Source: Octopus sinensis
Lineage: Eukaryota
Direction: 5' to 3'
Assembly: GCF_006345805.1 (NCBI RefSeq)
Contig: NC_042999.1
Coordinates: 70,804,001 to 70,868,000, forward strand
Length of the DNA: 64,000 bases
Notes under the pieces: generated by a model
What the model was told of the DNA's origin: nothing
Seen by the model: only the letters and a program-made list of their open reading frames with translations
Databases searched by the model: none
In this document: positions 7,002-38,916 of the stretch, in pieces
Layout: each line of letters opens with the position of its first letter
Numbering within the stretch: position 1 is the stretch's first letter
Position numbers and translations under genes: made by a program

Positions 7002-7155
7002 AAATGAAGGAAGAATACGAGGATTGTACAAAGGATTTCCAGTCTACATGGTTCATGTCACTCCCAACATATGCATCGTTTTACTAGTTTACGAGTACAT
7101 CACTTCACTTCATCAGGCGAACCATTCAGTGAAATCAGACCAATGGAAAACTTGA
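7002..7155 (+). CDS. SLC25A32: Terminal coding exon A of a mitochondrial carrier, variant H6 of SLC25A32 type: (R)NEGRIRGLYKGFPVYMVHVTPNICIVLLVYEYITSLHQANHSVKSDQWKT*
   Basis: Strong acceptor ctcttttctttttctgtccAG (AG at 7000-7001), phase 2; carrier motif EG..GLYKG followed by a hydrophobic helix VTPNICIVLLVYE; TGA at 7153-7155; aligns residue for residue with exon B apart from one inserted residue. Too short for the supplied ORF track. Confidence 0.8.
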
Positions 7156-9849
7156 AACGGTAACAAGGTCTGTGTTAAAAACAAACAATAAATAGATTGA
7201 AAAAAAAAAAAAGAAAGAAAAAAAGGGAAAAAATAAAGCAAAGAAAGAAAGCAAACATTCACTGGTCCTTCAGATGCTGCCCTTCTCAAAACATTGAAAT
7301 TAACCTGTCTGAAAGGGCATAGTTGACCTATTTTATTAACCTAGTTTTGACAAATATCATTACTAAAAGTCATTTATGTCATTTTCATTAATTTTGTCTT
7401 TCACATTTAATATTTTGTTTCACATTATTATTATTATTATTATTATTATTACTACTACTACTACTAATCATCATTATTTATATTAATAAAAAAGAAAGAA
7501 TTGCATGTATTTCTTTTCTTTTTTTTTTTCGGTTAAAGCTCCTCTTCATGCTCTTAAACCAATGACCTTTTCAGATGAATCATTAGATGAACATTTTTCG
7601 ATATATTCCTGAAGGGTGGGGGTGGGATACATAGCTATCTCCAATAGCTAAATATCATTAATTGTACTTTTAACTGCAACATTTCCTCTAAAAGGTACTG
7701 CTATCCCCCAAACACAAAGTTAATAATATTAATAATAATGATTATAGCGGTAATAGCAATAATAACGGTGATAATGATAGCAATGAGAATATTAATAACA
7801 ATGCTGATGACTCTATTAGGTAAATTCCTTTAGTTTTATTGAAAAAATAAATTGCTGATAATAATAATGATAATAATAATAATAATATTTGCAAACTATC
7901 ACCTGAGCATGAGGTTTTACTCTCTTTGCTTCTGCATCTTTCAAGGTCTTGGCTGATATTTATTTCTTCTCACACAGTAAGATTTCTTGCTTAACTTTGT
8001 TTCTTTTTTTTTTAATGTTCGTAAACTTTTATCACATCAGAATAACCTCCTTTTCCAGTTCCTTCATATCGCATTAAAAAATCTTACTGAAAGTAAAATA
8101 AAATATAGCATGATTTGAGCTGGATGGAATGGAAAGAAGTGTCATTCAAAAAACAAAGAAAACCCACATGAATTTAATTTCATTATTGTTAGAGTTCATT
8201 TTATTTATGTATATTTATCATAGGATATATTATGATTTTAGTAGTTGTCAAATTTGATATCATAACCAACTCATTCATTTCACTACCCCACTCACCTTGT
8301 AGTTATATTTTATTTGTTTAAACTCAATATATTTATGACTATTAGTTTCACCAATAATTCTTGCTTTTAAGCAATAATAAACCCGTGCCTTTATAAGGTG
8401 TGTAGTTTCTGCTACGTAGTTGAATATCTAATATGTTATAGACTTTGGTAATCCTTTTCTTTTAACTGTTTCTTTTTAAAGAATTTATCAGTGTTTTGTT
8501 TCAATGTATCTGCGACTTTTCTTAGCCATTCCACCATATTATTACCCATTAACAATGACAATACTGTAAGCTATGAAACTGGTTTGTGGTTCACCGAAAT
8601 CTATGTAGGGTTTTATGAAGTAGTTGTACTTATCAGAAATGTATATTTTAAAAAATTGAAGTGTTTGTGTATGTTAGACTATGTACATGCATTCTACTGA
8701 TGATGTTTTAATAAGGTTTCGAGTGGGCAAAAGCCAAGTTATTGAAGGCTTGATGTTCAGTATATTCATTGATCTCAGACTTTTGAGGGAAGAAAATGAA
8801 AATATGACATTGATGATTGTTTTATGAATAAAAATGTGTTATTTTCTGCCACTTGTGTGAAGTAGGAATAATAGCAATTCTTTTATATATGTGCAATGCT
8901 TTAAATTGTCAAGAAGGAGCAAAACTACTTCATGCTTGGTGCCTCAGAGAGAAGACAGACAATAATATTCTCACACACAACTGGTTGTTAAAGGGGAAAT
9001 GCTTTGTTAATTACATCAAGTACAATATATTGATGGTACTTGTTTAATAAACCTTGGAAGGATGACAAGCAAAGCTAGACTTTGCCGTGATTTGAAGATA
9101 TAAAATGAAGTACTGTAAAACATTGAATCAAGCGCTATATTGTGCTAATCATTTACCTTTGTTAATATTGGAATTTAGAAGTGAATATATAGATTTGTGG
9201 AGTTGGAATCAGTAAAGCACATGTCTTCTGTTCTCAGTTAAAATCTTTTTACTGGTACTTGTTTACCAGTAATACGCTAATTAATTATGCTCTTTCTTTA
9301 CCAAAATTAACCTTGTTCCCAATCAAATAAACCTATAATATAATTACAATGAGAACTGTAGAGTTAATAAACAGGTTAGTTAAAATTAAAGTGACTAGTG
9401 TGATTACAAACAAGAATTAGATGTGAGATAACTCCACTTATTTACTAATTTTCTATGGGAAAAGTATGAATGTCATATATTTCATTCTCTCTTTATAAAT
9501 CTGAGGCACCATAATGTCATTATTAATAATGACAATAATGTGATTATTTCTTTATTTTTTAATTAGCCCTGAAGATAATTGTTATTGTCTGGGTTTTGAA
9601 ATCTTGACACTAATAATTTTGTTTTAACTTTTGAATGGAAGTAGCTTTATAAAAATATTCTTTTAAAAATGTTCACAGGCCTGATTATGTGGTTAAGAAG
9701 TTTGTTCTGCAACCATGTAGTACTAGGTTTTGCTACACTAGGTTTTCTGCCATAGTCTTGGTTTGATCTGTACCTTGTAAGTGGAATTTGCTAGATATAA
9801 ATTGTGTTTAGAGCATATTGTGTGTGTGTGTGTTTATATAGCTTACCCA

Positions 9850-10080
9850 TATTATATTGGTGAAGGAGTAAACATCAGCAAAAACTGGTGCTATTCAAAT
9901 GAAGTCTTTCCCACCCAGATAATAGATGCTCTCCTCTTCCACTCTGTCTTCTCTCATTGTCAGAAATGTAATGAAGCAGTCATTAACCATTGGAAACCAG
10001 TAACCAACAACATCATTATTCACAAACAAACGAATAAAAGTTACCAAGCAATTGGTGAGTTATTGGAATTTAAAAAGAAA
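9850..10080. mobile_element. Possible Tc1-like transposase fragment
   Basis: Translation IIIHKQTNKSYQAIGELLE resembles a Tc1 N-terminal HTH; degenerate, no TIRs seen. Confidence 0.3.
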
Positions 10081-13000
10081 ATAAAAGCCAAAAAGAACTA
10101 CAGACAGTTTTACTGGTTGGCACTAGAAAGAACCCTTTTAAATGTATAAAAGCATGCAGGGTGTAGTGTTTAAGATCATAATTTTATTGATAGCAACTTC
10201 AGTTTTGCTCATTTTTTTTGTGTCTTGTTAGAAATAAGGTGAGTTAGGATTGATGAACATGTCATTATTTAATTTGGGAATGTTGCTTTACTTCATACTT
10301 TGAACAAGCTACAATTTGGGGAGCTTATCCATCCCGCTTCTTTGTCAGATGGGGATGACTTGACTCTGATTTCCACTTGCTTAGTGTTTAATATAATGTT
10401 TCTTTTCTCTTATTTTTTGTTGTCATATTTTGCATTTAAAGTGGGATATTGTTTGTATTGTTTTTCATCCTTTGACCTTCAGGAGTTTTTCAATATTTTA
10501 AAATATATATAAATTTTCGGCAACATTTTCTAAACATTAATGCAGAAAAGACTCACAGGTTACATGTTGATTAAACACCTTTAACTCAGTGCTTCTTTAT
10601 GGTATTGTTTGTAGTTGGTTAGTTTGTTTATATAAATGTTAGGGTTGATATTTTGCCATCTATGTCTTGTGTACTAAACCTTACAGAAATTGTATATACA
10701 TATCTCTCTCTCACACATGCATGTGTGTACACATACACACGAATATATCCATTTTCATAAAACAAGAAGCTCTGAGTAATGTCAGTCTAAACAAATTTTG
10801 CATGTATTGGATGAGATATCTTCCAACTATGTGTGTGTGTACCTGTATCGTTTTCTGAATAAAGGTAATGTATGTCTTAGGTGTATAAGTGAATCCAAAT
10901 AACAAATCCATTTGTGACATAAATCTTATTTCTATGATGGCCAGCTGAAAATGGGTACATATATGTTGTATGTACTGTATTTCAATTTTATGGCTTTGAT
11001 TTTTTTTGAGACAGCTTGCTCTGTCTTTAGCACCAAGACTTTCTCTTGATTGTGTATGTGAATATATGTATGATGCATACATACACACGCGTTTAGTTTG
11101 GATAGAATCTGTACTTTAAAAACTTTGTAGATTTTATGCTGCTGGTGGCAATAATAACAGTGGGATTTGAAATCAAGGAACTTTATTCTTTTGTTTTGTG
11201 ATATTTATTTTCAAATGTACATATAGCACTGTATATTCAATACTCTTCAAAAGTTATTTCAACACAAGTTTTTCTTTTTTTCATTTTCACACAATTTTTT
11301 AAAGAAATTTGTCTATTTTAGAGTTTCTGTATTGTTTGTATTTTATTTCATTTTGCTATAGTAGTTTGTTAAACATTTACAACTAGTAATTTTGGTTATT
11401 TTAATGCACTTTTGTCTTATTGGTATTTATTGCTAATAGATCTAACTAATCTTTGGAAACAAATGGTTAACAAGTGAAATCAAGAAGCAAATGTAGCTTG
11501 CAAATTTAATTAATCAATTAACTTAATGTTGTTTGCATCATATAAACTGACAAAAATTATGGAGTTAGAAACAGTTGTCATCAGCTGTATATAACCAGTC
11601 TGTTCCTGATTCCAATTTGTAGTCACTTCATTCCTTATATGATTAATATATTAGGGAAAGGGATGCACTTTTGCTTATCCTAAATCTCTTTGCTTATGCA
11701 TATGTGTTAAAAAAAGTTTTACAAAATATAATTCCATAACATATATTTAATAATTTCTTGGGAATTTTTTGTAGTCTGAGAAATCATGGAATTTAATAAT
11801 TACAAATATTAAGAAATATGGTACAGATATTTTTGAGAATGACAATTATGTTTTTAGTTTCATTCCATTTTCTCTACAAATCTGATGCCTTATGTTTTTA
11901 TAGAAAATCATCTGGAGAATTGGTTTGACAATTTTGGCCAGTCATGTCTTTGTGAATGGTAACTGTGGCAGCGTTCTTTGCAAATTGCTTTTTCAAAATA
12001 TGGTTTTAAAGTGTATACAGGTACATTTAAAGATTTATTGTCAATGCTAGTCAATATATAAAGTATGATGATTTGCCAGCTCCAGTCATTCCTCAATTTT
12101 GACTACTTTGGCATATTTAACACTCATAACATCACTTCTATCTTATCTTAGAAGAAAAGTTTTTGTCTTTATTGTATCATAACATTATGATGTAATATTT
12201 TATAGTCTATAAAATAGGTTCACTAAGGTGAGTTGAAAGAGTACTTTACAAATTTGTAGTGTTGTGTACAAATCTTACAATAGATCTAGCTTGGAGAGAG
12301 ATGGACCTTTTCATACTTGATTTTAGGCTTTTAACATGAAGTTTTCAGTAGTGTATTAATGACTCAAATGATTATGGTTATGGGATGTATGTATTCAAGT
12401 TCACTTATTCTTGCCAAACGTAACACAGTAAAAACAAAACATTATTTTGAATTTGGATAGTTTTTCTTTGTATGGTTTGTTACCTTAAAATTAAACTCTA
12501 TGCAACCAACATGTTCAAGCACTGCATGAGTCTGGAGAAATTTGGGGAACTTATTCCAGATCTTTATGCAGGCTTCATATTTAGTGTCACAATTATCCGT
12601 CAGGGATCATCTTGTTTTAAATTTTAATATATTATCACCAGACTCTGTTCTAATCCTCTCTCTGTTTTGGCTGCAATATTTATCAAGCCAGGAACTTCTC
12701 CAAATAGTTATCCAAAATTAGTTTTGATAATATAATTTAGAACAATAATCACTTTGAAATACAACCCAGAATCTTTCATAGCTGTAGAGTTGTTATTTTT
12801 TAAAAAATTACTTTCCTGATGTCATTTTACTTTAGGATCTACTTCACTGGTGTAGAAAACACTTCAACTTTATATCATTCATAAGATCAGTGTTATTATC
12901 CTAGAATGCATTCATATACAAAATTTTGAAACTAAGAAAAATGTCGCTATTTGATTAGGGACCAATGCAGTGCAAATGGTAGGGAAACATTAGTTGTACT

Positions 13001-14529
13001 GCTTGTGTGTGTGTTGCATATATCTAATTGCGAGTTTCATTCTTTATTTTGTTGTATCTGCAATGATATGAAATCCAAAATTCAGCATGCCGTATTTACT
13101 GATGAGTAAATACAAACATGTACACACTGTTATATGAATGCAGACTTAGACTTATACATTATACCCCTAAAATTTGATAACATTGAAGAACATTTCTTGC
13201 AGATACAGTTTTGTGTCATTATAGTGAAATTTATAGGGGAAACAAAAAAAGGAGACGAGATCTAATTTATGTCCTATTTATGTTGTACAGTCTTGCTAAT
13301 TAGGTTTGTTGCCCACTTAATTTCTAACCAGTGTTCTTTGGGCATTTAAAAATTTTTCTCATAAATTTCTTTCTCTTAAAATGTTTGCACCATTTGTATT
13401 GGAATTCATGTGGAGTATTTTTGTTTCAAAATTTAGTAGCAAAATGTGTAACTCTCAATTAAAAAAAAAACAAAAAAAAAACAGCAAAAAAAGCAAAAAC
13501 AAATTAAAACAAAATCAGTTAAAAATATCTTATTTATACTTTAAGAATAATATATGGATTTTAATTGTATGTATTGCAGAGGATTAGTGAGGTTATATCA
13601 TTTTAATTTATTTTTATTGTCAAATTGATAAAACAGATGTTTTTATTAATTATAGTTGTATGTAAAATTATTAAATAGGAAAACTTAAAAAAAAAAAAAA
13701 TAATTATGTTTAACAATATATTGGAATTCAACAATGAAACAAAAGCCAAGATAAAAGCAACAATGACACACACAACATATACATGATAATTCAATTTCTT
13801 TTTGATAATTTTTATTTATTGAAATATCAATTTTATCTGTTTTTTTTCCCTGCAATTTTCAATAATGAAAGCATCTCAGTGTTATTAAAATTTGAAATTG
13901 GAGTTTGTATTTGAATTGAAACTCCTATCTTTCATTTATTGTAAGTTTGTTCAAAGAATGATATTTCAACAGAAACAGAATAACACTGTTACTAAGAATC
14001 AGTGGCAGTAATTAAAAAAATAAAATGAGAATGGAGAAAAAAGAAGGAAGAAAAATAAACCTCAACAAAAAAACAAAACAACAGTACTTTATATTTTAGA
14101 TGACTGTTACAGGGTTGGCTCCTGGTGAGTCAAGATTACCACCCTGTCTTGATACTTGATAATAAAAGCCATTTTAAATTTACTGTTGCTTTTGGACAAG
14201 GCATGTGCATCAGGATATCCCTAATATCTCTTTTGTATACATTTCTTCTTCTTTTTTCCCCATTCTACCTTGTGTAATCAAGCAATTAAATTGTGAATTA
14301 TTTATTCTTGTTTTGCACCCAACTTTTGTCCAATGTGGCAGGTATGAAGAGAATTTGGTAAATCCCGGTACATATCATAAATAGCATGAAATTATATTTT
14401 TTATTTTTTTTTTGCATGTCTTTATATTACCATTATCCCTTTCCCCTCCCAAATTTCCTCACCATTTCTGATATATAAATCTGTCAAGTACATTACTGAA
14501 AATAACCACCTGAAAAACTAAAAAAAAAA

Positions 14530-14720
14530 AAAAACTGACAACAGTGACAGAATTGGGTAAAACATAGGACAAAAAGTCCTGCAGTATTTAAGTAGATCTC
14601 TTTGCATCTGAAACTCAAACCCTGTCAAGTTTGATTTTGCTTTCCATTTTTCTGGCATTGATACAAGTACCAGTTGGGTACTGGAGTTGATTTGACTGTA
14701 CCCTCTCTCCAAATGTGTGG
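14530..14720 (-). mobile_element. SINE family 1 fragment
   Basis: gatacaagtaccagttg...ggccttgtgcctatgatag core and a gagtttcagatgc head remnant; diverged, with mixed orientation of pieces. Confidence 0.5.
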
Positions 14721-14944
14721 CCTTGTGCCTATGATAGTAATAAAAATTATTATTAAAAAAGGGCAGTAGACTAGCAGAAACAGTAGTACTAGACTATGTA
14801 AATACCTCACAGTTTTTAGTTATATTGTATGTTCTGTGTTCAGTTACTGCCAGTTTGTACCAGTCATATTCATGATTTGATTCAGTCAGCTACAAACCTT
14901 TCTTGTGCCAACACCAGAGATTCATATTATTAGAAAAGTGCTAG

Positions 14945-15150
14945 AACTGGTAGATCATCAGCTAAATATCTTTGCATGTCTAGTTCCATCCCTGTTTTGA
15001 GTTCAGATCCTTCTGATGTTGACTTTGTATATCACCCTTTCACAGTCAATAAATAAAGTGCTATCTGGCATGCAGAAGAGTTGATTCATTTGACAATACT
15101 CCTCCAGTGAAACTGTGGTCTTGTGCCAATCTGTGGAATTCATATATCAT
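14945..15150 (+). mobile_element. SINE family 1 copy
   Basis: gagttcagatcc head, gttgactttg...aataaa core, ggtcttgtgccaatc end, (att)n tail. Confidence 0.6.
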
Positions 15151-16571
15151 TATTATTACTCAATATTTAGTAGTGACTTGATAGAATTAAGATGACGACA
15201 ATACAATACACAGAGAACATAACGTAAAATGATTTCTAACTCAAGACATCTATTTTGCATTTGTTACTATAATTTGGTTTTTTAATGTACTAGGATGTAT
15301 TTGATTGAATATACTCTGATCTTTCCATTATTTCTTGATTTTCCTTTCTATCTTTCATTATCTCTCATCATAATTTTCAATATTCATGACTACTATATAC
15401 ATGTATAAAATTTTTCCAGTATACATGTATAAAATTTTATCTTTGGATTTTGTGTACACAACTGTTTGTGTTCTGTTTGAGAGATACTTTTGTGTCCGAA
15501 TAATTTTATGTTGAACGTAAATATAGAAATTCCAACATGGCACATTTTAAAGTTCTCTCCCTACCATCCCTGCTATTCTCACTCTTGTACTCAAATGATT
15601 TTTATTTCTTACAATTCTACAGGCCTTTATAACAGTAATAATTAAAAACAAGCTGCAATACCCCAGTAGACAAAAAACAAACAAAAAACCCCCCAAAAAA
15701 TAACATGCCCACCCCCATAAAAGAAAATATAAATTACACTTTTTAAAAAAAAATTATTCAGAACTATGTGATTTGGTGCTTATTTTAACTCTGACCATAA
15801 CCTATGTTCAAAACAAATGTATAAAAGCAAAATTCTATGTGGACATAAATAAAAGCCCAACAAAACTAAAATTTATTTTCTCTATTAACAAATAGTAGAT
15901 TATGTTTCTAGCTGTTTCTTTCTTTTTATTTTTCAAGTTACAACTTTTTGTATATTTTTCTTTTAACGCTTTCCTTTCTTATTTGGCTTTTTTTTCTTTT
16001 AATGCTTTTTCTATTATAATTTATTATTGTAATTGGCACTGAGGTTTAAGTTGTAAGATGTTTGACTTTGGTGCTTTGTTAGCTTCTCTAATCAACCAAG
16101 TACCATTTCACATCATTGGGTGGTGGACTCAGAAATATGACTTTCTCTACTTAGACAAATGAGTGATGTTTTGTCAGAGAGACTATTTTTGGCAGGTGCC
16201 AGAGTATTGTTACAAGATCTTCAGGTCTTCATTCCATACCTTGGTTTTGATTTCCATTTGTATGTAATCTAATTTGTTAATGACCTTGGGAAAGGCATGA
16301 ACATCACATTTTATCATTTTCTATTCATTATTGCCCATGCCTAATTTGGAAAAAAAAAAAATTAATTTTTTCTTTCTAATTATGTGGAGGTCATTTTATA
16401 ATTGTTGTAGCACTTATTTCTTTTCTTTTCACATTCCTTTGAGGCCATTAATTTACTTTTTGAAACAAACATGCCTGCACACATACATATACAACATATA
16501 TACAACATATATACTTACATACAAACATACATACACCGATTCACACATATTTATATGGACATAAAGACATA

Positions 16572-16618
<47 letters not shown>

Positions 16619-18051
16619 TGCCAACTTTTTAATCCACTGAAAGACAGTAGTGGCAACATCTATCTTTCTCACTTGACTTCTGTGAAGGACAAGCTAATAA
16701 TAATGATAATGTATTGATACTTTTGTATATCCCATGCCAAGTATTCCACTTGGAATTCTTGAAGAAATTAAACAAAAGGACATTTTTTTTTGTTTTTTTT
16801 TTTGAGTGTATGTGGTATATATTTTGCATACCTTGTTGAATGAATCTTAAATAAAAAAAATTACAAATGCTTTATTGAATTGTTTTTTTCCTTACATAAA
16901 TTGTTTTTGTTTTTCTATTTTTTTTACAGTAAAGTACACATAAATGTAATGCTGTATGAAATTTAAGCAATGAATTTATAGTGACTGGGCAGGAACGAAT
17001 TGAATTATGATTTGCTGGATTATATTGACTGTAAAATTGAGGTGTTTGATTATTCCTCATATTGTCATGAGTTCGAGCATTACTAAGAATCATGTTGAAT
17101 TCTTGAATGTGATAACTTAGTGTGTTTCTGGTTCCCTGATGGGTAAAACCAAATTCTGATTCTATTTGATAGTTGAGTTATTATCAACTGGATGTATATC
17201 CTATTGTAAAAATAAGTGGTCCAATTAAAGCTCTTCCCTCTTCCAGTAGTATGGAAAATATTGGGCAAAATGGATGTAGAGAATTAATAACAGGCCCTGC
17301 CATCTAATGACATAGTTATTGCTTCCAATATTTTTCACCTTGAGTTCTTTTCATTACCACAGTTTCCATAGAACCAAGATTTGCTACTCTGCGTTATGCT
17401 TGTGATCTTCAACTTTTCAGAATGCTACTGAAAACAATATTGTTGCCTTGAAATCCACAAAACCTTTAATAATATTTGACACAATTACTTCTCGCTAAGT
17501 CTTGCATTTGTGGGTTCCACCCATCTCTGGTAGTTTACTTAGAAAATTTCTTATCAAGCTATTCTATCACACATTTCGTAATTCTCTCAATCCACATTCT
17601 ATTAACATTAGTGTTGCTCAGTTATACTTCTCATGCCCCTTTCCTACACATTGACCTACTTCCAATTAAATACTGGTAATGTAAAGGCCCTCATCTTTAC
17701 ATATTCACTCATCTACATAAGACAATCTTTATGCAATTCATGGAAATTTTATTCTTCCTACAGTGTTAAACAGTAACTACACATGTGAGGAACTAACCAT
17801 ACTGCATCTTTACATATGAATAGCTATTCACAACTAAAACATTAAAAAACTATATGAATGCTAACTCTCACAATATATATAAAATTCTCAAGAATATCAC
17901 ATATTTGTAACAAACTATGCCTCCTCAGAGACTAAATGTTCTCTTAAGATACAAGTGAACACCATATAGACTACTGCTAAGACATCTAAAGCAGAACAGT
18001 TGCTAAACAACTATTCTAGAATCCTTCTCCATCTCACTCTACCCTCTAAAG

Positions 18052-18380
18052 CAGCGTTCCTCAACCAGGGTTCACCAGAGCCTTATGGTTCTGCAAAAAG
18101 GTTCCTAGGGGTTCCCTTGAGAAAGAGATAAGCTAATGGTAATATTACCATACGTGCGCAACATATTAGTTATTGTAATATAGACATCATCCTGTCAAAC
18201 CTGTTATGTTATTAAAAAAATATGACAACCGTGTATATATATATATATATGATATTTACCACATGAATAATGAAAAAATATGAGAAAGATATGGTATATA
18301 ATATTTTTTGTACAGGGGTTCCTTGAGATATGTAATTTATTTTAAGGGTTATGCAGGGGTAAAAATGTTGAGAAACACTG
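18052..18380. mobile_element. hAT (Charlie-like) MITE
   Basis: TIRs CAGCGTTCCTCAACC and TGTTGAGAAACACTG; perfect 8-bp TSD CTCTAAAG at 18044-18051 and 18381-18388. Confidence 0.9.
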
Positions 18381-27409: not shown

Positions 27410-27457
<48 letters not shown>

Positions 27458-27552
27458 TAGAAATGGTAAGACAACAAAAGAATGAAAGAGACCTCGATAT
27501 GTAAATAGAGGAATTTATCTGTAAATGTAATATGTGACAATCATTCGGTAGC

Positions 27553-28374: not shown

Positions 28375-28989
28375 TATATATATATGTATACACACACACA
28401 CATATACATTTATTATCATCACCATCATCATTGTTTGTAGTTTTTTTAATGAAAATACTGACCGGCTTTTAATACAGCATGTATTTTCTATTTGTGTGTA
28501 TATTTGTGGACATACTCTACCTGCTTTATAACCTTTTGTGTAATTCTTCTTATGCACTGGCTTGAAATCCTGTTTGTATTTATAACTACCCATAATCATT
28601 GGAAGTTCGGTATTATTATTTGCATAAAAGCACTATGTGAGATCACCAGGTATTGTGAAGTCTAGCAATTGTAGCAACTATGAAGGCTATAATTATGTGT
28701 TGATCATTTGTTAAAAACATGTGGTACAAAATTGTTTTCTTGAGATGTGCATTTTCTTGTACGTTTGAAGAAATTCCTTTCGGAAGATATTTTTTCTGAG
28801 ATCTCTGTTCATGGATGCAGTGTGAGTGTAGTATGATGCGTTCAGGTTGCATGTGGTGTGCAGCCAGTTGAAGAAATATTTGTTAGTCATATAGTACTGT
28901 AATTAAGAGATACAGGAGAGTGCAGTACTAAATGCTCTACAGCTCTTAGTGTACGAATGAGTTTATTTAAAATTTACATAAACATATAA

Positions 28990-29232
28990 AAAGCACCAAC
29001 CGATCGTGGCCGCTGCCAGCCTCCCCTGGCACCTGTGCCGGTGGCACGTGAAAAGCACCCACTAAACTCACGGAGTAGTTGGCGTTAGGAAGGGCATCCA
29101 GCTGTAGAAACACTGCCAGATCAGACTGGAGCCTGGTGCAGCCTCCTGGCTTCCCAGAACCCGGTTGAACCATCCAATCCGTGCTAGCACGGAAAATGGA
29201 TGTTAAACGATGATGATGATGATGATGATGAT
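28990..29232 (+). mobile_element. RTE-type 3' tail or SINE ending in (GAT)n
   Basis: ggcgttaggaagggcatccagctgtagaaac...gatgttaaacgatgatgat; recurs at 4840-5030, 25170-25400, 29390-29550 and 42085-42230. Confidence 0.75.
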
Positions 29233-29384
29233 ATTTGTATAAGAAACAGTGTACCTTTCAGTGCAGGCTCTGGATTCCATAAAAAATCTGTAGAGATAAA
29301 CTTAAAAATGCAACATTGCACTGCTAACACAAAAGTAAGACACAGTACTGACTTGTAAGCTTTTAATATACTTGGTAGTATATT

Positions 29385-29550
29385 ACATCATCATCATCAT
29401 CATCATCATCGTTTAACGTCCGCTTTCCATACTAGCATGGGTTGGACGGTTCAACTGGGGTCTGGGAAGCCTGAAGGCTGCACCAGGCCAGTCAGATCTG
29501 GCAGTGTTTCTACAGCTGGATGCCCTTCCTAAAGCCAACCACTCCGAAAT
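29385..29550 (-). mobile_element. RTE-type 3' tail or SINE, inverted relative to 28990-29232
   Basis: catcatcatcgtttaacgtccgctttccat...cagctggatgcccttcctaa is the reverse complement of the preceding copy. Confidence 0.8.
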
Positions 29551-30447
29551 AAAATATTGTATCCTTGCTAGCAATTAATATTTGTGCATCAGCTGCCAGG
29601 AATATGTTTCATATGTAAATTGGTCTGTCCAATAGTATTATACCACTAGACTTACTGGGTATTTAAGAAATACGTTTGGAGATAGTTGAAGATTTGGATG
29701 TGGTGCTGACGAAAGAGTAATAACTCTTGAAATTTATATATATATATATTCACCGACTATCTATTTTTTCTATCTTTGATATCATTGTTTAGAATGTAAA
29801 CAATGAGATCAAAGTAGAAAAAGTATGAAACACGATGTTAAATGATGATGATGATGATGATGTCCATAATGTGGTTTACCACAAGCCTTCCTTGCCAGCA
29901 CTGCTTGAGCAGGGTTTTTTTTTATCATAGGTGTCCCACACATAACCATCCTGTCTCGTTAAGAATCTCTGAAACATTATCCATTGTGTTCTTTCTGCTT
30001 TTTCATGTGGTTGGATGTTGATTAACGAAAATTTTGTTGCTCTTTCTTGCAACAGGTTAATAAATATAGATACATGTGAGATATGTAGGAACACTAATAT
30101 AATTCTATGTTATATCGTAAGATCATCATCATCATCATTGTCATCGTCATTATTTTATGTTTGACTTTTGCTTTGTATTTGTACAAGTTGGCTCCAAGTC
30201 TCACCCAGAGACCTCAAGAAACAATAAGTTAGAAATTCATGTTGGTGTTATGCCTAGGGTGCCATATATTTGGTTTTGTACATAGTGTTGTTCTAGAGAA
30301 TGTTTAAGAAACCATAAGAAAATTATGTTTGTTTCAAAATTTGAGATTACATAGACAGTATTGGGCACTTCCCATGAACACTATCATTTGAATTTCTGCC
30401 ATTTTTGGGTTTCCTGGTATCTGAGCTAGGTAGCAATCAGCCATTAC

Positions 30448-30486
<39 letters not shown>

Positions 30487-31042
30487 CACCGCCGCCACCA
30501 CCAGCAGGAGGAGGAGGAGGAGGAGGAGGCAGAATCATTAGCATGTTGGGCATTCTGTCTTTATATTCTGAATTCAAACTCTGCCAAGGTCAATTTTAAT
30601 TTTCAACCTTTTTTTTGGTGGTGGTGGTGGTGGTGAAATAAGTACCAGTTGAGCTTTTTAGCTTTTCTGTAACTCTCTCTCTTCACTTTCCTTATCCACT
30701 TATCATCTGGGAGTTGCACTCCGCTATTGCTGCTGCTGTTGTTGTTGTTGTCATCATTTGTTTGTTTGTCTGTTTATTTTAAGTAATTATTGATATCTAA
30801 ATTCAAATCTTTTCTAATTAACTTTTCTGATAGCATTCTTTTTATATTTGGCAACTACTCATAGTAATGAATCTCGGGCTTGTAATAGCTCTGGGCTATG
30901 TAAGAAACCAGTTTATTAAGTATATAAAAGTTATTTTTATAAGATGGTGAGACTAGTTTTATTTGGTAATAAATCTTGTACTGTTGGAAGGCATGTAGCT
31001 AAATAGCTTGGGATGTTCAACCTCACATCATAAGCTTTTGGA

Positions 31043-31318
31043 CATTATCTACATTATTTACATTTGACGGATATTTGTCCTCATCTTGTTCGCTGTTAAC
31101 ACAACATTTCGGCTGATATACCCTCCAGCCTTCATCAGGTATCTTGGGGAAATTTCGAACTTGGGTCCTCATTCCTAACGTATTTTTCAATGTTGTTGTT
31201 GTTGGTGTTGGTATTGTTGATGTTGTTGTTGTTAATATTATTATTATTTATTATTATTATTATTATTCAAACAAGATGAGGACAAATATCCATTAAATGT
31301 AACTAATGTAAATAATAT
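31043..31318. mobile_element. Short fold-back element with Penelope-like terminus
   Basis: Inverted arms of about 45 bp (31043-31090 and 31270-31318); the interior, read on minus, contains cctgatgaaggc...ccgaaatgttg, resembling Penelope 3' termini. Confidence 0.55.
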
Positions 31319-31700
31319 ACGTAATTCCTCATCTCTTAAATATAGAACTGCCTAAGCTTTTGGGTTTGATTCCTAGACTGATTAATGTATTGCTGCTATT
31401 ACTTATTGTTAATGACAATGTAACATATTAAGATCAATCTTATTGATTTTATCAGATGTGTTACTCTTATACATGGCCCTCCTCCTCTCTCTTATTTTAT
31501 ACTTGTAATATTGTAGCGCACCAGGCTGTTTGATGTCACTGTCTTGCATTTAGATATCTCATCTGGCCCCCTTTCTCTTTATACATTCCTACTTATGTAA
31601 CATATCAGACCTATGTCATCAGCTCACCATCTGTCTCCCTCATATACATATGCATGTGCACATGTGTGTGTGTACACACATGCACACACACACACACACA

Positions 31701-31735
<35 letters not shown>

Positions 31736-32119
31736 TCTGTTTCTCATGATGAATCATACTTAGTGGAATATTGAGAGTGTTGGATAGAATGTTTAGTATT
31801 TGTTCTGGCTTTTGGTGCTCAGAGTTCAAATCTTGCTGAAGGTAACTTTGCCATTTATCTTCCCAGGGTCAATGCTGGGGTTGTCTAAACAACCGTAGTG
31901 ATGAAATGTGTGTAGGAACTAATATTGATTTCAGATTTTGGCACAAGGCCAGCAGTTTTGAAGTAGGGGCTAAGTCAAATTGACCCTGGTGCTCATCATC
32001 ATCATCATCATTATCATCATCATCATCATATGTTCAATTCCCATGCTGCCATGGATTGGACAGTTTGACAGAAGCTGGTCAGTTGGAGAGCTGGATGCAC
32101 TTCCTAATACCACTCCAAG

Positions 32120-32505
32120 AGTGGTTGGTTTGGTAAGTAACTTGCTTACCAACCACATGGTTCCGGGTTCAGTCCCACTGCATGGCACTTTGGACAAGTG
32201 TCTACTATAGCCTCAGGCCGACTGAAGTCTTGTGAGTGGATTTGGTAGATGGAAACTGAAAGAAGCCCATTGTATATATATATATATATATATGTGTTTG
32301 TGTGTCTGTGTTTGTCCCTCCAACATTGCTTGACAACGATGCTGGTGTGTTTACATTCCCGTAACTTAGCAGTTCGGCAAAAGAGACTTATAGAACAAGT
32401 ACTAGGCTTACAAAGAATAAGTCCTGGGGTCGATTTGTTCAACTAAAGGCGGTGCTCCAGTATGGCCGCAATCAAATGACTGAAACAAGTGAAAGAGAAA
32501 AAGAG
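32120..32505 (+). mobile_element. tRNA-derived SINE, family 2
   Basis: Colinear with 55647-56045, including the internal TA/TG microsatellite and the tail aaggcggtgctccagtatggccgca.tcaaatgactgaaacaag. Confidence 0.85.
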
Positions 32506-32681
32506 TGTAGTGAGTGCTTTTATGAAATACTGGCTTTATCAACCCCAAAAAGTTGAATGGTGAAATTTGAGTTCAGAATGTGAAGACAGACGAAATACTG
32601 CCAAGCATTTAGCCCAACGTTAACGATTCTGTGATTAATAGGAACTAAGAATATTAACTTTTGTTTATATCTTGATATCTC

Positions 32682-32728
<47 letters not shown>

Positions 32729-33249
32729 TGTTTGTGTTTGTTCCTAACCATTACTTGGCAACTGGTGTTGGTTTGTTTACATCCCTGTAATCTAGTAGTT
32801 TGGCAAAAAAAAAAAAAAAAAAGAGACTGATAGAGTAAGCATCAAACTAAACAAAATAATAAGTACTGAGCTTGATTTGTTCAATTAAACCTTTCAAAGC
32901 AGTGGTCCAGCATGGCTGCAGTTCAGTGGAACCCAAGTAAAAGAAGTCAAAAAGAAAATGCTACAGGAACTATTCAAAAACAGACCATTGTGCAAAACTA
33001 CAGAACAGAAATAAAAGAAAAGAAAGAAAGATACTAAACTATTTGATATACTTAACAAATGGGTAAACAACACTTTTGAAGATAATTTTAGATATAACAG
33101 TGTAATTTGTTTGAGTTAGTTGATACCTCTTGCTCTCAATGAAATCTTCATGTCCCAATTTTGAATTTCCTGATAAAGCCTATCTTCAGTTAAATTGAAG
33201 ATGCCGACCTGCAAGGAAGACTCTTATTTAGTTATGTGATTACGTTTAT

Positions 33250-33745
33250 CCTTTCCTTGTTTTAATCATTGGACTGTGGCCATACTGGAGCACCATGGTT
33301 TTAATTGAACAAATTAACCCCAGTACTATTTTTTTTGCTTTAAAGCCGTGTATTTATTCTGTTGGCCTCTTTTGCCAAACAGCTAAGTTACAGGCACACA
33401 AACCAACCAACACTTGTCTAGTGGGGTGGGTGGGTGGAACAAAGACAAACACAGATATGAAGGTACAGATATCTATGTTTGCCTGACTGCTTGCTTGCCT
33501 ATTTCCTACCTACCCACCCACCTACCTTCCTACCTACCTACCTACCTACCTGCCTACCTACCTACCTACCCATCTGTCTACCTACCTATCTACTTACCTA
33601 CCTACTTGCCTGCCTGCCTGTCTGATGGGCTTCCACACAGTTTCTGTCAACCAAATTCATTCACAAGGCATTGGTCAGCCCAGGGCTCTAGTAGAAGATA
33701 CCTACCCAAGTTGCTATGAAGTGGAATGAACCTGAAGCCATGTTA
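33250..33745 (-). mobile_element. SINE family 2 with expanded internal (CCTA)n
   Basis: Both ends match family 2 in reverse complement; 33505-33620 is a CCTA/CCTG array. Confidence 0.7.
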
Positions 33746-34623
33746 TTGTTTAGTTGCAAATCAGCTCTGATGAAGCAAACCTGTAATCAAAGGCCTCCCA
33801 GCTCTGATCATCTATCCTTTATTCAGGCATAGTGCCATCTAGAACTATAATACTCAATAAGTACTTTCTTCTTTAAGGTAATAGGATATGGTTTAATGAA
33901 GACTTGGCGGCTATTACCCGCAACTTCAACTACCATACTCTTATTTTGATGCTCTTACAGTGATTGGAAAAGATTGTTAATAAGCTATGGTATTTTGAGA
34001 TGGTTTACACTGCTTACTTGCAATATCTTTTTCATATTTCTGCAGAAGGCAGAAAAAAAAAAATCTATTTTATTTTACTATGTCTTAGTTAAAGGTGTAC
34101 TTGGAAAGGACGTATCTGGAATGCTGCATCAATACCACTAGTAATGTTAATATAATAATGAAATGTACTTCCTTTTTTTTTAACTACAAACTATTTTTTC
34201 TTTATAAGAAAACTTTGTAGAACGTTTGTGTCTTGAATTGAAATAGTACTTATTATACACAGCTACCAATGACTAAATACTTTCAGAACTTTACTTTATG
34301 ATATATACTCTTCACTCAAGTTCCTCAATTTCATTTAGTTTAATCTAGTCGAAATTCTCTCCCCTTTAATAGTAAACTCATCTGGAACAAACCACTTGTT
34401 CAATAGTAATGATAATAATGATTTCTTTTATTGGCCACAAGGACCCATTCTGTGATTGAAATGGAGTGAAACTCTTTTAGAAGACACTTGGATACATCTG
34501 CCAAATAATAGTTACAATTTCAGCAGTCAAAAACAGCAAAGGACAAGCAAGATTAGAGGAAACTCACTAGTGATGGTTCGAGCATGGATTCCATATGTAA
34601 TGCCAATAATAATAGTAATAATG

Positions 34624-34656
<33 letters not shown>

Positions 34657-36849
34657 CCCTCATAACAATGATCTTTCCATAAAACACTGGTGGTAGTGTA
34701 AACCTAAAGTCAGTAACCTCATATAAATGTTTTATACCAAACTCAAATTTTACAAAACAACAGTCCAATGAGACTTGAGCCTCTGGTGAAGGTTTCTTGC
34801 CTAATAGGTACTTTGTAGTTCAGTAGCACATGCCTGATCATCATCTTGTTTTTGTTATGTGAAAAGTAGAGTAGACAAAGAAAGTCAACAAGAAAGTAAT
34901 GGAAGGCTACTTAAGAAGCAGAACGAAAAAGAAAAGAATTCTGGAAAAGAATGCTGAACATTTGGAATGTATGGGGGTATTTAATCTCAGAGGACAAGAG
35001 CTTATAAATTAAGTGTTGTGTATCAGGAATGGTAAAAATCTCTCTGATTTAGAAATTGAAACTGTACAAAGATCACCCAATAGTATTCAGCAACCAGTTT
35101 CTACATCTTTCATTCATCACCATCATCATTCATCATATTCAGCCATTATTTTTTCACTGTAATGTGAGGACATCCTTAAGTAGGTGTCAGTTGGAATCAT
35201 CCTGTGCTGTTTTTCTCCCTGTAATGCTCATAAAGTTATCTATTTCATCTGTCCATGTTGTGCTGTCTTTCCTGATGTAGCAAACCTCTTTTCTTCAGTC
35301 TCTGTTCTATACACAGCTTTGTCTCCCTGTTGTTATTTGTTTGAACTGCATGCTTTTTCCAGCTCCATTTTCTCATAATATGTTTTATTATATCTTGTAC
35401 TATTGCTTACTATTTTATCCATTCACAAATTTTCCATCTTTAGTCATTCCTAACAAGCATCTTTTTATACTACTTTGTGTTGTCCTAAGTTTCTGTTCCA
35501 GGCTTTTAGTTATTGTTCACGTCTCTGTTCCATAATTTTTTGCTGTTATGACAAGTTCAGGATAAAATACTCTGCACTTCAGGTACAATGGCATCTTGTC
35601 CTGATGTTAATTTATGAAAAGCACTTGTGTTATCTCAGATCCCTCTCTACTTCACCAAGATAGCTGTATCCCACTTTTACTAGCTCTCCAAAATAAATTT
35701 TGCATTTGTTAGCTCTTATTACTATAGGTGGACTTAATGACTTCATGCAGTCATAAAAACCATACCAAATTAGACTGTGGAGCACGATGCAGTCCTTTGA
35801 CTCGTCGGCTCCTGTCAAATAGTTCAACCCATGCCAACATGGAACATGGACATTAAATGATGATTGATGATTGAATAGTCAGCTATTACAGTTTTATATG
35901 TTAAAAAACCATGCAAACCGAGATATACTCTGGTCTATAGTCAATAAAGTCTGTTATGCTATGGAAGATAACGTTCTGCATAGTCGAAACAATTGAATAT
36001 TTTTTTAAACATTACTTTCAAATTATTTGTAATCTTCATTTAGTGGAATGTTTTTTGAAATTTAAATCTTGTAATTTGTAGAAGTCTAACAAATGTTATC
36101 TCCCTTTAAATTGGTGTGTCGGTTAAGAGTAATCTCCCTTGGATTGGATAACTTAAAAAACAAAAAAAAATTAAAATTACGAGTATAATTTTGAAATAGA
36201 GTTCTGTTGTGTCTGGGGAGAGTCATTTTCTTTTTGTGCCTTATAATGTAACACACTCACCGGTAAAATTTCCACTTATTTCTTATTTTTATTTTTCTAA
36301 AATTTTCGTTGCGTCTTACAACCTTTTCAATAGTCTTGACTTAGTCCATTATTTACACTCCAAATCCAAAAACGAAATTTAAAATAGAGTTTCTAAATTA
36401 AAGCTATATTTTTTGCATAGCTATTATCATTTCCCCTTGATTATTTGCTTATCTAACTTAGAATCTCCGAAACGTATAATGCCAGAGAGTCGAAATACTT
36501 ATCAAAATTAAGAACAAAAGTTTTCATTTGTGTTTACAAAATTACCTGTCGGCTCATCAGTATTAAACTATCAACATGGCGATCCAGTAATATTAAGCTG
36601 GTTATTAGAAAGCCAAGAAACTACTTTGAAATGTAATAAATTTGACGAAAAATGAAAGAGAATAGAAATACGTTCATATTCATAGTTACATTGCTATACA
36701 ATTTCTTTCAGTAATTAGCTAGTCTAAAACACATTCAAAGCTTAATGACTTCACATATCAATAAAACACTACCATACTCCAGTCTCTTATAAGCATGAAC
36801 AACATTTCAACTGGAACCCTGTAGGTCAATGCAACTGCTATATGTCACC

Positions 36850-37200
36850 ATCATGAAGAATCTCTCCTGGTGAATGTGCATCCATAACATTGCAAAGATT
36901 ACATCACAAAGATTAACTTTACTCTTCAGAGCCAGAAAATAATTTTCTCCATCCACTTAACAACTGCTTACCTTCTATAAAGGCTAAGTGAGATATTCAA
37001 TGGAATTTTGCTTCCACATCTGGGATGCTACCGCTGCTAAGCACTCAAACATTATAGACCACATCTAAAGAAAGGCTACTCAGCTAATTGGCATGAAGCC
37101 ATGCTCAATCATATTTTAACTTCTATCCCACAGATTTACTGTCTCCTCTTTATGCTTTATTTCATTGCCAAGACAGTGACTTCTGCATCTTGGTGTTGGC
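36850..37200 (+). mobile_element. Ancient CR1/Jockey-like LINE RT C-terminal remnant
   Basis: Broken frame resembling LYKA..MEFC.HIWD...LD.I..KA..LI; heavily decayed. Confidence 0.4.
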
Positions 37201-37367
37201 TGTTACCTCCACTCAAGGACTGCTAGGCCACCACCATAGCCATGATGCTTAGTCCTTCATACCTGGACTGTCAGCCACTAAAATACCTCTCTGCAGCTGT
37301 TGACTTGCAACTTGGCAAGTGTAACCATGTTAATCTCAGTCTGAGAGGGCCTGAGGAAGACATAAGG

Positions 37368-37500
37368 GCCTCCTCCTCCCCTCCCAATCCCCTCCCCCTC
37401 CCCTCCCCCTCCCCTCCCCCTCCCCTCCCCCTCCTCCTCCCCCATCTTCTTCTCCATCTCCTCATCTCCTCGTCACCCCTCCCCCTCCTCATCAGCGTCA
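37368..37500. repeat. C-rich polypyrimidine tract (CCT/CCCCT)n
   Basis: Read directly; the G-runs lie on the minus strand. Confidence 0.9.
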
Positions 37501-37714
37501 TCTAACGTCCATGTCCCACACTGGCATATGTTATTCCTGATTAAACCAGTGAGAGAGGGAGAAACAAAAGCTCTTAGACACTTCTTATGCAGAAAAAATA
37601 TTTTCTTTTGTTTGTTCTTCATTTAATGTTAATTCAAATATTTCTTTTGATTTTTGTAAGACAATGGAAGCTGTGTTGCATAGTGAATATAGTCTTTTTC
37701 TGCTTTCCCCCCCC

Positions 37715-38380
37715 CCTCTCTTCTGGCAGAATCGTTAGTACACTGGATGAAATGCTCAGTGGTATTTCACCTCTTGCTACATTCTGAGTTCAAATTCTGC
37801 TGAGGTCAACTTTGCCTTTCATCCTTTCGGAGTTGATAAATTATGTACCAGTGAAACACTGGGGTTAATTTCAGGCCTTGTGCCTATAGTAGAAAGGATT
37901 ATTATTATTGTGGTTGTTGTTATGAGCTGACAGAATTGTTAGCATGCTGGACATAATACTTAGTGATAGTTCTAGCTTTATGTTCTTAATTCAAGTTACA
38001 CCAAGATCAACTTTACCTTTCAGCCTTTTGTGGTTGATGAAATAAGTACCAGCTAAGCACTGGTATCAATATAATCAACCCCCCCCCCCAAATATTGCTG
38101 GCCCAGTGCCGAAATTTGAAACTATTATCATTATTATTGTTATTATTAATTTGGTGAGCTGGCAGAATTGTTAGCACACTGGACAAAATGCTTAGCGGTA
38201 TTGTGCCTGTTGCTACGTTCTGAGTTCAAATTCTGCCAAGGTCAACTTTACTTTTCATTCTTTCATGGTTGATAAAATAAGTACCAGTTGAACACTGGGG
38301 TCGATATAATCAACTCATCCTGTCTCTCAAAACTACTGAACTTGTGGCATAATTTGAAACCATTATTATTATTATTATGC
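37715..38380 (+). mobile_element. Three head-to-tail SINE family 1 copies
   Basis: Units start near 37720, 37925 and 38150 (ggcagaat.gttag...), each with a .agtt.aa head box and an (att)n tail. Confidence 0.85.
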
Positions 38381-38702
38381 ACAATTATGATATTAGAAAC
38401 AGAGAGAGCATCAGAAGTTTAGATGTGAGAGAAGAATGCTCATATCTCAGTAAATATCATTGAATCAGTGACTAAAGCCTTAGTACCTATCAGTCAACAC
38501 CTTTCTACAATAATTGATATCATTATTTGTATAGAAAAAAAAATCTGAAATATTAATGTAATTTGATATAATCATTTCTCACGTATTGGTTTGCAGTGAA
38601 TTATTTTTGTCTGTTTTTCTCACATAAAATAATTTATGATTATTTTTTCCCTCATTCAATAATCTGAGTATTGATTTTAATGGTTTTGTTTTTGAATTTC
38701 AG

Positions 38703-38916
38703 GCATGAAGGTGTCTATGGATTCTATAAAGGGCTTGTGCCTAATCTGGTACGAGTTACTCCTGCATGCTGCATCACGTTCCTGGTATATGAAACAATGA
38801 TGAGTAAATTTGCTGATAGACGAGAACAGCAAGAGCAACTTGAAGCTGAACTTGAAGCTGCACTTCAGTTGCAAGAGCAGAATGCAATTCCACCTGTAAA
38901 TGGCAAAACGGAGTGA
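38703..38916 (+). CDS. SLC25A32: Terminal coding exon B of the mitochondrial folate/FAD carrier: (R)[70 protein letters not shown]
   Basis: Acceptor ggttttgtttttgaatttcAG (AG at 38701-38702), phase 2; near-identical to the recalled human SLC25A32 C-terminus [29 protein letters not shown]; TGA at 38914-38916. Confidence 0.93.

What the first reader, a model, noticed from the sequence alone, without database searches (positions are those of the whole stretch)
7002..38916. Duplicated, mutually exclusive last exons that swap the substrate-contact helix H6 of the mitochondrial folate/FAD carrier
Seen: two homologous terminal exons 31.5 kb apart on the same strand. Each has a good acceptor, the same phase 2, a first base (A or G) that completes an Arg codon from an upstream exon ending in AG or CG, and its own stop codon. 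A reads NEGRIRGLYKGFPVYMVHVTPNICIVLLVYE; B reads [30 protein letters not shown]. I found none of the other carrier exons (NPIWVVKTRL-, SHGAIQFM- or YPYQVVR-type motifs) between them. Known: vertebrate SLC25A32 has a phase-2 intron at this position and, as far as I know, a single last exon. Inference: one gene makes two carriers that share H1-H5 and differ in H6 and the C-tail through alternative last-exon choice, a possible splicing-level specificity switch. My unverified recollection is that arthropod MFT isoforms carry a similar HVTPNIC ending, which would make this an ancient protostome arrangement.
Basis: partly seen in the sequence, partly recalled or inferred. Interest (0 to 1): 0.9.

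Follow-up and report, generated by a model that had tools for sequence, protein, structure and literature searches.

The report
Octopus folate/FAD carrier: two alternative H6 exons
The window holds the 3' end of the Octopus sinensis mitochondrial folate/FAD carrier gene (SLC25A32), which has two ancient, homologous exons that give the protein alternative last membrane helices; both forms are already in RefSeq, but the arrangement is shared by molluscs and arthropods and appears unstudied.

Summary
Exon A (7002-7155, stop included) and exon B (38703-38916) are real, lie on the same strand in the same phase, and are the only mitochondrial-carrier coding pieces in the 64 kb. Their translations equal the C-termini of Octopus sinensis RefSeq isoforms X2 (365 aa) and X1 (385 aa), which share residues 1-315. 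The gene spans 103 kb, so the common exons lie upstream of the window.

The one-gene, two-carrier reading is supported, with one refinement. A is an optional exon with its own stop, not only a last exon. In cuttlefish, two transcripts differ by exactly a 221-nt exon A inserted between the last common exon and B. In another cephalopod, A-type mRNAs end just after A.

Exon A is under strong purifying selection (dN/dS 0.06 against cuttlefish). The A-type (HVTPNIC) and B-type ([10 protein letters not shown]) helices form two clean classes across molluscs, annelids and arthropods. The order A then B also holds in abalone and ant genomes and within limpet, copepod and wasp gene models. The Arg that aligns with the third binding-site Arg of UCP1 is His in every A-type.

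The isoforms are already annotated automatically; I found no paper on them. A functional difference is inferred, not shown.

The parts
6980..7001 (+). 3' splice site of exon A: pyrimidine tract (actcttttctttttctgtcc) and AG at 7000-7001
   Evidence: Read directly. Using this acceptor gives the TWR|NEG junction of the annotated 365-aa isoform.
7002..7155 (+). Exon A coding part. The first base completes Arg (AGA); then 50 codons follow (end of matrix helix h56, A-type transmembrane helix H6, short tail) and the stop TGA at 7153-7155.
   Evidence: 100% identical to the C-terminus of O. sinensis isoform X2 (P0225). Mito_carr profile positions 60-92 of 96; the homologous segment of a related cephalopod is modelled as a helix with pLDDT 94-96.
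7160..7169 (+). Two candidate 5' splice sites just after the stop: ACG|GTAACA (GT 7160-7161) and AAG|GTCTGT (GT 7168-7169). Either would join exon A to exon B.
   Evidence: The sequence is. The function is inferred from cuttlefish, where exon A is spliced to exon B. Which site octopus uses, if any, was not determined.
7187..7212 (+). AATAAA (7187-7192) followed by a genomic A-run (7200-7212): a candidate poly(A) site that would make exon A a terminal exon
   Evidence: By analogy with 10 RNA contigs of another cephalopod, whose A-type mRNAs read through the homologous donor and end in an AATAAA/A-rich stretch about 75 nt later. Inferred for octopus.
7170..38702 (+). 31.5-kb interval between exon A and exon B. 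It is intron when A is spliced to B, and part of the last intron when A is skipped. No carrier exon and no recognisable gene lie in it.
   Evidence: Searches found no carrier match; the six longest ORFs inside it, and three more upstream of exon A, have no Pfam hit; no Rfam family in the window.
38680..38702 (+). 3' splice site of exon B (ttttgtttttgaatttcag), AG at 38701-38702
   Evidence: Gives the TWR|HEG junction of the 385-aa isoform.
38703..38916 (+). Exon B coding part. The first base completes Arg (AGG); then 70 codons follow (B-type H6, [10 protein letters not shown], and a long acidic tail) and the stop TGA at 38914-38916.
   Evidence: 100% identical to the C-terminus of O. sinensis isoform X1 (P0227). 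Mito_carr E 6e-10, 39.2 bits, above the cut-off of 22.3.

Best explanation
The window is the 3' part of the single Octopus sinensis SLC25A32 gene (mitochondrial folate/FAD carrier, MFT), which spans 103 kb. Two homologous exons, A and B, descend from an ancient tandem exon duplication. Each encodes the end of matrix helix h56, transmembrane helix H6 and a C-tail. If the acceptor at 7001/7002 is used, translation ends at the stop inside exon A and gives the 365-aa A-type carrier. That holds whether the mRNA is polyadenylated just after A or spliced on to B, which is then 3'UTR. If A is skipped, the last common exon joins B and gives the 385-aa B-type carrier. The ending is therefore set by one decision: whether exon A's acceptor is used or skipped. 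Shown here: the gene anatomy, both annotated products, inclusion and skipping of A in cuttlefish mRNAs, purifying selection on A, and conservation of both helix types across protostomes. Inferred: the two carriers differ in the substrate-binding site. The B-type Arg that aligns with the third binding-site Arg of UCP1 (contact point III) is His in all A-types, and neighbouring residues change with it (N to Y, A to N, C to I). That would change substrate preference or kinetics.
For: Identity with the RefSeq isoforms, and identical residues 1-315 in both. The gene range is 103,040 bp, which places the common exons upstream of the window. No other carrier exon is in the window. Cuttlefish contigs L005 and L018 are 99.5-100% identical except for a 221-nt insert, which is exon A, between ...ATATGGAG and GTATGAAGG.... 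Ten RNA contigs of another cephalopod carry the full A-type CDS. dN/dS of exon A between octopus and cuttlefish is 0.06 (dN 0.082, dS 1.36), against 0.15 for exon B. Between O. sinensis and O. bimaculoides, A differs at 1 of 50 residues and B at 12 of 70. Among 52 H6 segments from molluscs, annelids, nemerteans and arthropods, identity is 69% within A, 75% within B and 49% between A and B. The nearest neighbour is always of the same type. Abalone has six common exons, then A, then B, with RefSeq X1 = A and X2 = B. The ant has A, then B 2.3 kb downstream. The AlphaFold model of an A-type protein is a regular six-helix carrier, with H6 at 345-369 and pLDDT 94-96. The Arg/His position aligns with the Arg of UCP1 ...SFLRLGSW....
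Against: I saw no octopus transcript directly, because the octopus isoforms are computed gene models. The 3' end of exon A in octopus (donor or poly(A) site) is not resolved. The ratio and tissue pattern of the two forms are unknown. No transport data exist for either form, so the functional difference rests on residue positions alone. The dN/dS estimates rest on only 36 codons.
Confidence: 0.85

Rival explanations
1. Two tandem paralogous genes: exon A ends an upstream gene, and exon B belongs to a second gene with its own upstream exons.
For: Tandem duplication is common in SLC25 genes. The two exons are 31.5 kb apart.
Against: No other carrier exon lies between A and B or anywhere else in the window. 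The annotated isoforms share residues 1-315 exactly. The cuttlefish transcripts have the same upstream sequence with and without A. Abalone has one set of six common exons followed by A and B.
Confidence: 0.02
2. Exon A is a decaying duplicate or a non-productive 'poison' exon. Its stop codon would only lower the output of the B-type carrier through mRNA decay, and the A-type protein would have no role.
For: A carries an in-frame stop and can lie upstream of another exon. In cuttlefish the stop is 72 nt before the A-B junction.
Against: Selection acts at the amino-acid level: dN/dS is 0.06, and A is better conserved than B within cephalopods. The A-type helix is conserved across phyla, and every insect protein retrieved outside the Hymenoptera ends in it. 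It models as a confident H6. Full-length A-type mRNAs were assembled in 10 RNA samples. In octopus the stop lies only 4-12 nt before the candidate donors.
Confidence: 0.05
3. Both carriers transport the same substrates. The duplication was kept for regulation instead: different tissues, different 3'UTRs, or different tails (the acidic 40-residue tail of B against the short Trp-containing tail of A) affecting import, stability or partners.
For: The tails differ far more than the helices. A-containing mRNAs have different 3' ends. Many tandem-exon isoform pairs are tissue-specific (PMC9741552).
Against: The type-specific differences sit inside H6 and have been fixed across phyla: H against R, N against A, I against C, Y against N. 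The tails are not conserved between phyla, so the helix is what selection has kept distinct.
Confidence: 0.35

Closest known systems
Vertebrate SLC25A32 (human mitochondrial folate transporter / FAD carrier)
   Same: An orthologous carrier. A read-through fragment (P0007), whose flanking sequence resembles vertebrate MFT, suggests an intron right after ...TWR, the same position.
   Different: To my knowledge vertebrates have only the B-type last exon, which was not tested here. Octopus and other protostomes add an A-type exon (HVTPNIC) upstream of it.
SLC25A3 phosphate carrier, isoforms A and B from exons 3A/3B
   Same: A mitochondrial-carrier gene in which tandem homologous exons swap one membrane segment and yield two carriers. 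The bovine isoforms A and B were expressed and characterised separately (Fiermonte et al. 1998, cited in PMC10027655). That they arise by mutually exclusive splicing is from my own knowledge.
   Different: In SLC25A3 an internal N-terminal exon is swapped by true mutually exclusive splicing in vertebrates. Here the last coding exon (H6 plus tail) is swapped, both exons can be in one mRNA, and the stop codon in A enforces exclusivity.
Tandem duplicated exon substitution events (Martinez-Gomez et al., PMC9741552, PMC8373072)
   Same: An ancient tandem exon duplication, homologous substitution of a structural element, and strong conservation of both copies. That work also describes an event conserved across protostomes and lost in chordates.
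   Different: I found no SLC25 gene in the main text of PMC9741552. Those events are internal exons of equal length, whereas this one is terminal and the tails differ in length.
Calcitonin/CGRP-type alternative 3'-terminal exon and composite exons (my own knowledge)
   Same: An upstream optional exon with its own stop and nearby poly(A) signal competes with splicing to the downstream terminal exon.
   Different: In calcitonin/CGRP the two endings are unrelated peptides. Here they are homologous versions of the same helix, and A can also act as an internal exon.

Membership tests
Mitochondrial carrier family (SLC25, Pfam PF00153 Mito_carr) | Match to the roughly 96-residue carrier repeat above Pfam's gathering score | tested here: met
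   Exon B alone scores 39.2 bits against a cut-off of 22.3. Exon A alone scores 19 bits (E 1.2e-3), below the cut-off because it covers only a third of a repeat. The cuttlefish ORF ending in A scores 136 bits.
Mitochondrial carrier family (SLC25, Pfam PF00153 Mito_carr) | Six transmembrane helices in three repeats, with the alternative exon forming H6 | tested here: met
   In the AlphaFold model of the A-type protein P0010, the six long helices are 70-102, 137-162, 173-202, 248-275, 286-314 and 345-369. pLDDT is 94-96 over the A-exon helix and pTM is 0.77.
SLC25A32 / MFT orthologue | Best relatives are SLC25A32 proteins, and the sequence equals an annotated SLC25A32 product | tested here: met
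   The window exons are 100% identical to the C-termini of XP_029633992.1 and XP_029633991.1, 'mitochondrial folate transporter/carrier' of O. sinensis. The relatives that carry a source name are called SLC25A32 or MFT, or bear an uninformative label such as 'hypothetical protein'.
SLC25A32 / MFT orthologue | Transport of folates and/or FAD | not testable with these tools
   This needs reconstitution or complementation assays.
Classical mutually exclusive exons (MXE) | Adjacent homologous exons in the same phase | tested here: met
   Same strand, same phase-2 acceptor, 49% identity over H6, and no exon in between.
Classical mutually exclusive exons (MXE) | Exactly one of the two exons is present in any mature mRNA | tested here: not met
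   Cuttlefish transcript L005 contains A followed by B. Exclusivity is at the protein level, through the stop in A.
Alternative last exons (each with its own poly(A) site) | The upstream exon ends transcripts at its own poly(A) site | tested here: inconclusive
   Ten RNA contigs of one cephalopod end in an AATAAA/A-rich stretch shortly after A. Octopus has AATAAA at 7187 followed by a genomic A-run. No octopus 3'-end data were available, and internal priming on the A-run cannot be excluded.
Poison (mRNA-decay-coupled) cassette exon | The exon is conserved for its stop or regulatory sequence, not for the encoded peptide | tested here: not met
   dN/dS is 0.06 with saturated or near-saturated dS. 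The peptide class is conserved across phyla.

The most novel reading that the evidence does not exclude
The A-type and B-type H6 helices give one gene two substrate specificities, for example one form preferring FAD and the other reduced folates. The Arg/His exchange at contact point III would be the main determinant. Protostomes would have kept this switch since before molluscs and arthropods split, while vertebrates kept only the B-type. That would offer a natural handle on the long-running question of whether SLC25A32 carries folate, FAD or both.
Probability: 0.2. Interest if true: 0.8.

Novelty: new member of a known kind. Interest (0 to 1): 0.5.

Why it matters
What SLC25A32 carries (folates, FAD or both) is still debated, and no structure exists for it. 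This is a naturally occurring pair of isoforms, conserved across phyla, that exchanges only helix H6 and replaces a binding-site Arg by His. It is a ready-made experiment on what that helix contributes. It also adds a second clear case, after the phosphate carrier SLC25A3, of a mitochondrial carrier diversified by tandem exon duplication. Here the stop codon in the upstream exon, not mutually exclusive splicing, decides the protein end. The practical caveat is that the isoforms are already in RefSeq. What is new is the comparative and structural reading, not the existence of the two products.

Tried and rejected
1. The word-indexed protein search with the exon A peptide found nothing, probably because products cut by contig ends are not indexed. 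The exhaustive representative search did find A-type relatives.
2. A paper search for the run and assembly accessions, meant to name the organisms behind L001, L002 and L005, found no paper. The cuttlefish assignment of L005 and L018 rests on cluster membership with Acanthosepion pharaonis SLC25A32. The species behind P0010 and L002 remain unnamed.
3. DNA of the full O. sinensis gene could not be fetched because the range exceeds 100 kb. The 365-aa octopus proteins are not on record as called genes, so no octopus transcript could be inspected.
4. Literature searches on SLC25A32 isoforms, mitochondrial-carrier tandem exon duplication, contact points and CG8026 found no description of this arrangement.
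5. blastn of A and B with 500-nt flanks found no collinear DNA similarity, so the duplication is too old to date from introns.
6. Nested gene or non-coding RNA in the A-B interval: the long ORFs have no Pfam hit, and the window matches no Rfam family.
7. The tandem-gene and dead-exon models were rejected, as set out under the rival explanations.
Full report
**What is in the sequence**

At 7002 an exon opens behind a pyrimidine tract and an AG (7000-7001). It reads, in phase 2, NEGRIRGLYKGFPVYMVHVTPNICIVLLVYEYITSLHQANHSVKSDQWKT and stops at 7153-7155. At 38703 a second exon opens behind ...gaatttcag. It reads [43 protein letters not shown]...NGKTE and stops at 38914-38916. Both match the last third of the Pfam mitochondrial-carrier repeat: profile positions 57-94 for B at E 6e-10, and 60-92 for A at E 1.2e-3.

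**No other carrier exon in the window**

Four tests found carrier-like sequence only at these two places in all 64 kb:
- tblastn with a much closer cuttlefish ORF.
- tblastn with the full O. sinensis proteins.
- A six-frame scan for the carrier signature motifs.

The long ORFs between and before the exons have no Pfam match, and the window matches no Rfam family.

**Whose gene it is**

The exhaustive protein search with exon A, followed by a homologue search with its best hit, led to annotated cephalopod proteins.
- The window's exon A peptide is 100% identical to the C-terminus of O. sinensis 'mitochondrial folate transporter/carrier isoform X2' (XP_029633992.1 / XP_036356974.1, 365 aa).
- Exon B is 100% identical to the C-terminus of isoform X1 (XP_029633991.1, 385 aa).
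- The two proteins are identical over residues 1-315 and split after ...EKTWR.
- O. vulgaris differs by one residue in B. O. bimaculoides differs by one residue in A and twelve in B. The window is therefore O. sinensis or something indistinguishable from it.
- The gene range in assembly GCA_006345805.1 is 103,040 bp. This explains why the common exons are not in the window.

The one-gene, two-product reading therefore already exists as automatic annotation in three octopus species.

**Transcript evidence from relatives**

Logan RNA contig L005 (SRR8281680) encodes MFT residues up to ...DVILRIWR, joined to an A-type exon (73% identical to the octopus one, ending DDWKT, stop). A B-type exon follows, with no AG in front of it. 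Contig L018 (SRR5319792) encodes the full 382-aa B-type protein P0105. That protein clusters with Acanthosepion (Sepia) pharaonis SLC25A32.

The two contigs are 99.5-100% identical except that L005 has 221 extra bases (556-776). Those bases are exactly exon A, sitting between ...ATATGGAG and GTATGAAGG.... In cuttlefish, then, A is a cassette exon. When it is included, its stop ends the protein and B becomes 3'UTR. When it is skipped, B is translated.

In a second decapodiform species, ten RNA contigs carry a full 383-aa A-type CDS (P0010). Their 3'UTR runs through the homologous donor (CCTAAAAT|GTATGGG...) and ends in an AATAAA/A-rich stretch about 75 nt later. There A acts as a terminal exon.

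Octopus has the same layout:
- Candidate donors lie 4 and 12 nt after the stop, with GT at 7160-7161 and at 7168-7169.
- AATAAA sits at 7187-7192.
- An A-run sits at 7200-7212.

I could not determine which of these octopus uses. Two RefSeq accessions for the same 365-aa protein are compatible with two transcript forms but do not prove it.

**Is exon A under selection?**

Over the 36 core codons, octopus A against cuttlefish A gives dN 0.082, dS 1.36 and a ratio of 0.06. B against B gives 0.174, 1.15 and 0.15. A against B always gives dN of about 0.5, with dS saturated or near saturation. There is no collinear DNA similarity between A and B or their flanks. The duplication is very old, and an unconstrained copy would long since have decayed. 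Within octopuses, A is better conserved than B.

**How old and how widespread**

C-termini of the best 120 homologues fall into two classes. Fifty-two H6 segments from named taxa give 69% mean identity within A, 75% within B and 49% between the classes. Every segment's nearest neighbour is of its own class.
- A-type consensus: G[FL]YKGxxxY[LM]xHVTPNIC[ILM]V.
- B-type consensus: GFYKGLxPxLxRV[TV]PA..[IL]TF.
- A-type occurs in cephalopods, gastropods, bivalves, annelids, insects, a crayfish, a copepod, a scorpion and mites.
- B-type occurs in cephalopods, gastropods, bivalves, a chiton, nemerteans, springtails, wasps, an ant and a copepod.

Both types in one gene, in the order A then B, were seen in several places:
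- Haliotis rufescens: six common exons at 10001-17608, A at 18867-19001, B at about 24765-24890. RefSeq X1 is A-type and X2 is B-type.
- An unnamed bivalve-like genome, L002: A at 2403 and B at 10057.
- Read-through gene models of Lottia, Tigriopus, Cotesia and Trachymyrmex.

In the ant genome the A-type helix is fused to the preceding exon. A GT lies exactly at the old phase-2 position (TGGAG|GTCAGA). The B exon has a TTACAG|G acceptor 2.3 kb downstream. The simplest reading is one duplication before molluscs and arthropods diverged. Deuterostomes and non-bilaterians were not surveyed.

**What the swap changes**

The alternative exon starts at the end of matrix helix h56 (EGxxGxYKG) and covers all of H6. 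An AlphaFold model of the A-type protein is a regular six-helix carrier, with H6 at 345-369, pLDDT 94-96 and pTM 0.77.

In the HMMER alignment to UCP1, the Arg of B-type ...NLVRVTP... pairs with the Arg of ...SFLRLGSW.... From my knowledge of the family, this is the third of the three binding-site arginines, equivalent to contact point III (Arg279 of the bovine ADP/ATP carrier). In all 29 A-type segments this residue is His. Three neighbouring positions change with it: N to Y, A to N and C to I.

A change in how the carrier holds its anionic substrate is therefore plausible, but it is inference. A regulatory or tissue role without any change in substrate cannot be excluded.

**Comparison with what is known**

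The closest precedent inside the family is the phosphate carrier SLC25A3. Its isoforms A and B come from alternative homologous exons. The isoforms are cited in PMC10027655; the splicing mechanism is from my own knowledge.

The general class is tandem duplicated exon substitution (PMC9741552, PMC8373072). This case fails one defining feature of classical mutually exclusive exons, because both exons can sit in one mRNA. It works more like a calcitonin/CGRP-type optional terminal exon, except that the two endings are homologous.

My searches found no paper describing it. The searched library omits most subscription journals, so the absence is not proof.

**Verdict**

- At the annotation level the finding is already public.
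- The comparative depth and the Arg/His exchange are, as far as I can tell, undescribed.
- I file it as a new member of a known kind, of moderate interest.

Noticed in passing
window 44133-45005 (+) and 50673-51107 (+): Fragments of non-LTR retrotransposon reverse transcriptase. The first ORF matches Pfam RVT_1 at E 3e-6, below the cut-off. The second has no Pfam hit but shares the C-terminal motif pattern of the first. Both lie downstream of the gene.
   Followed up: partly
window 56000-60000, ORF 58565-59059 (+): A GC-rich island (48-52% GC against about 33% elsewhere). One ORF matches Pfam DUF7047 at E 1e-20. It is probably a retroelement remnant; its nature was not resolved.
   Followed up: partly
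window 48363-50114, 51463-52685, 54419-54731: Very long (AT)n microsatellite arrays, up to about 1.2 kb each. They produce the GC drop to 15% and the 'YIYIYI' pseudo-ORFs.
   Followed up: yes
window 37923-38378: Two copies of a 235-nt unit in tandem (75% match), only about 325 nt upstream of the exon B acceptor. This may be a pair of SINE-like elements. Any effect on splicing is unknown.
   Followed up: no
window 784-1290 (+): A CT-rich, strongly skewed stretch (GC skew -0.29 over 1-2000) that translates as repeated HSLTHSLL units. It looks like a low-complexity repeat in the intron upstream of exon A.
   Followed up: no
L006 (Haliotis rufescens) 14093-14167 and 14485-14559: Two extra copies of the first 14 codons of the exon that starts at about 14682 (GFTTLVLTNPIWVT), each with the same upstream acceptor-like sequence and then running into stops. 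This is a recent tandem repeat that includes the 5' end of an exon, giving probable pseudo-acceptors.
   Followed up: partly
L017 (Trachymyrmex zeteki) 15992-16246 and about 18621-18792: In the ant the A-type helix is not a separate exon but continues the preceding exon. A GT lies exactly at the ancestral intron position, so the B-type form would need an internal 5' splice site. The deposited gene model instead joins A and B into one 375-aa protein, which looks like a mis-annotation. Lottia, Tigriopus and Cotesia models show the same kind of fusion.
   Followed up: partly
L005 556-776 against L007-L016 3'UTRs: Two decapodiform cephalopods treat the same exon differently. In one it is spliced on to exon B from a donor 72 nt after the stop. 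In the other the homologous donor is read through and the mRNA ends about 75 nt later.
   Followed up: partly
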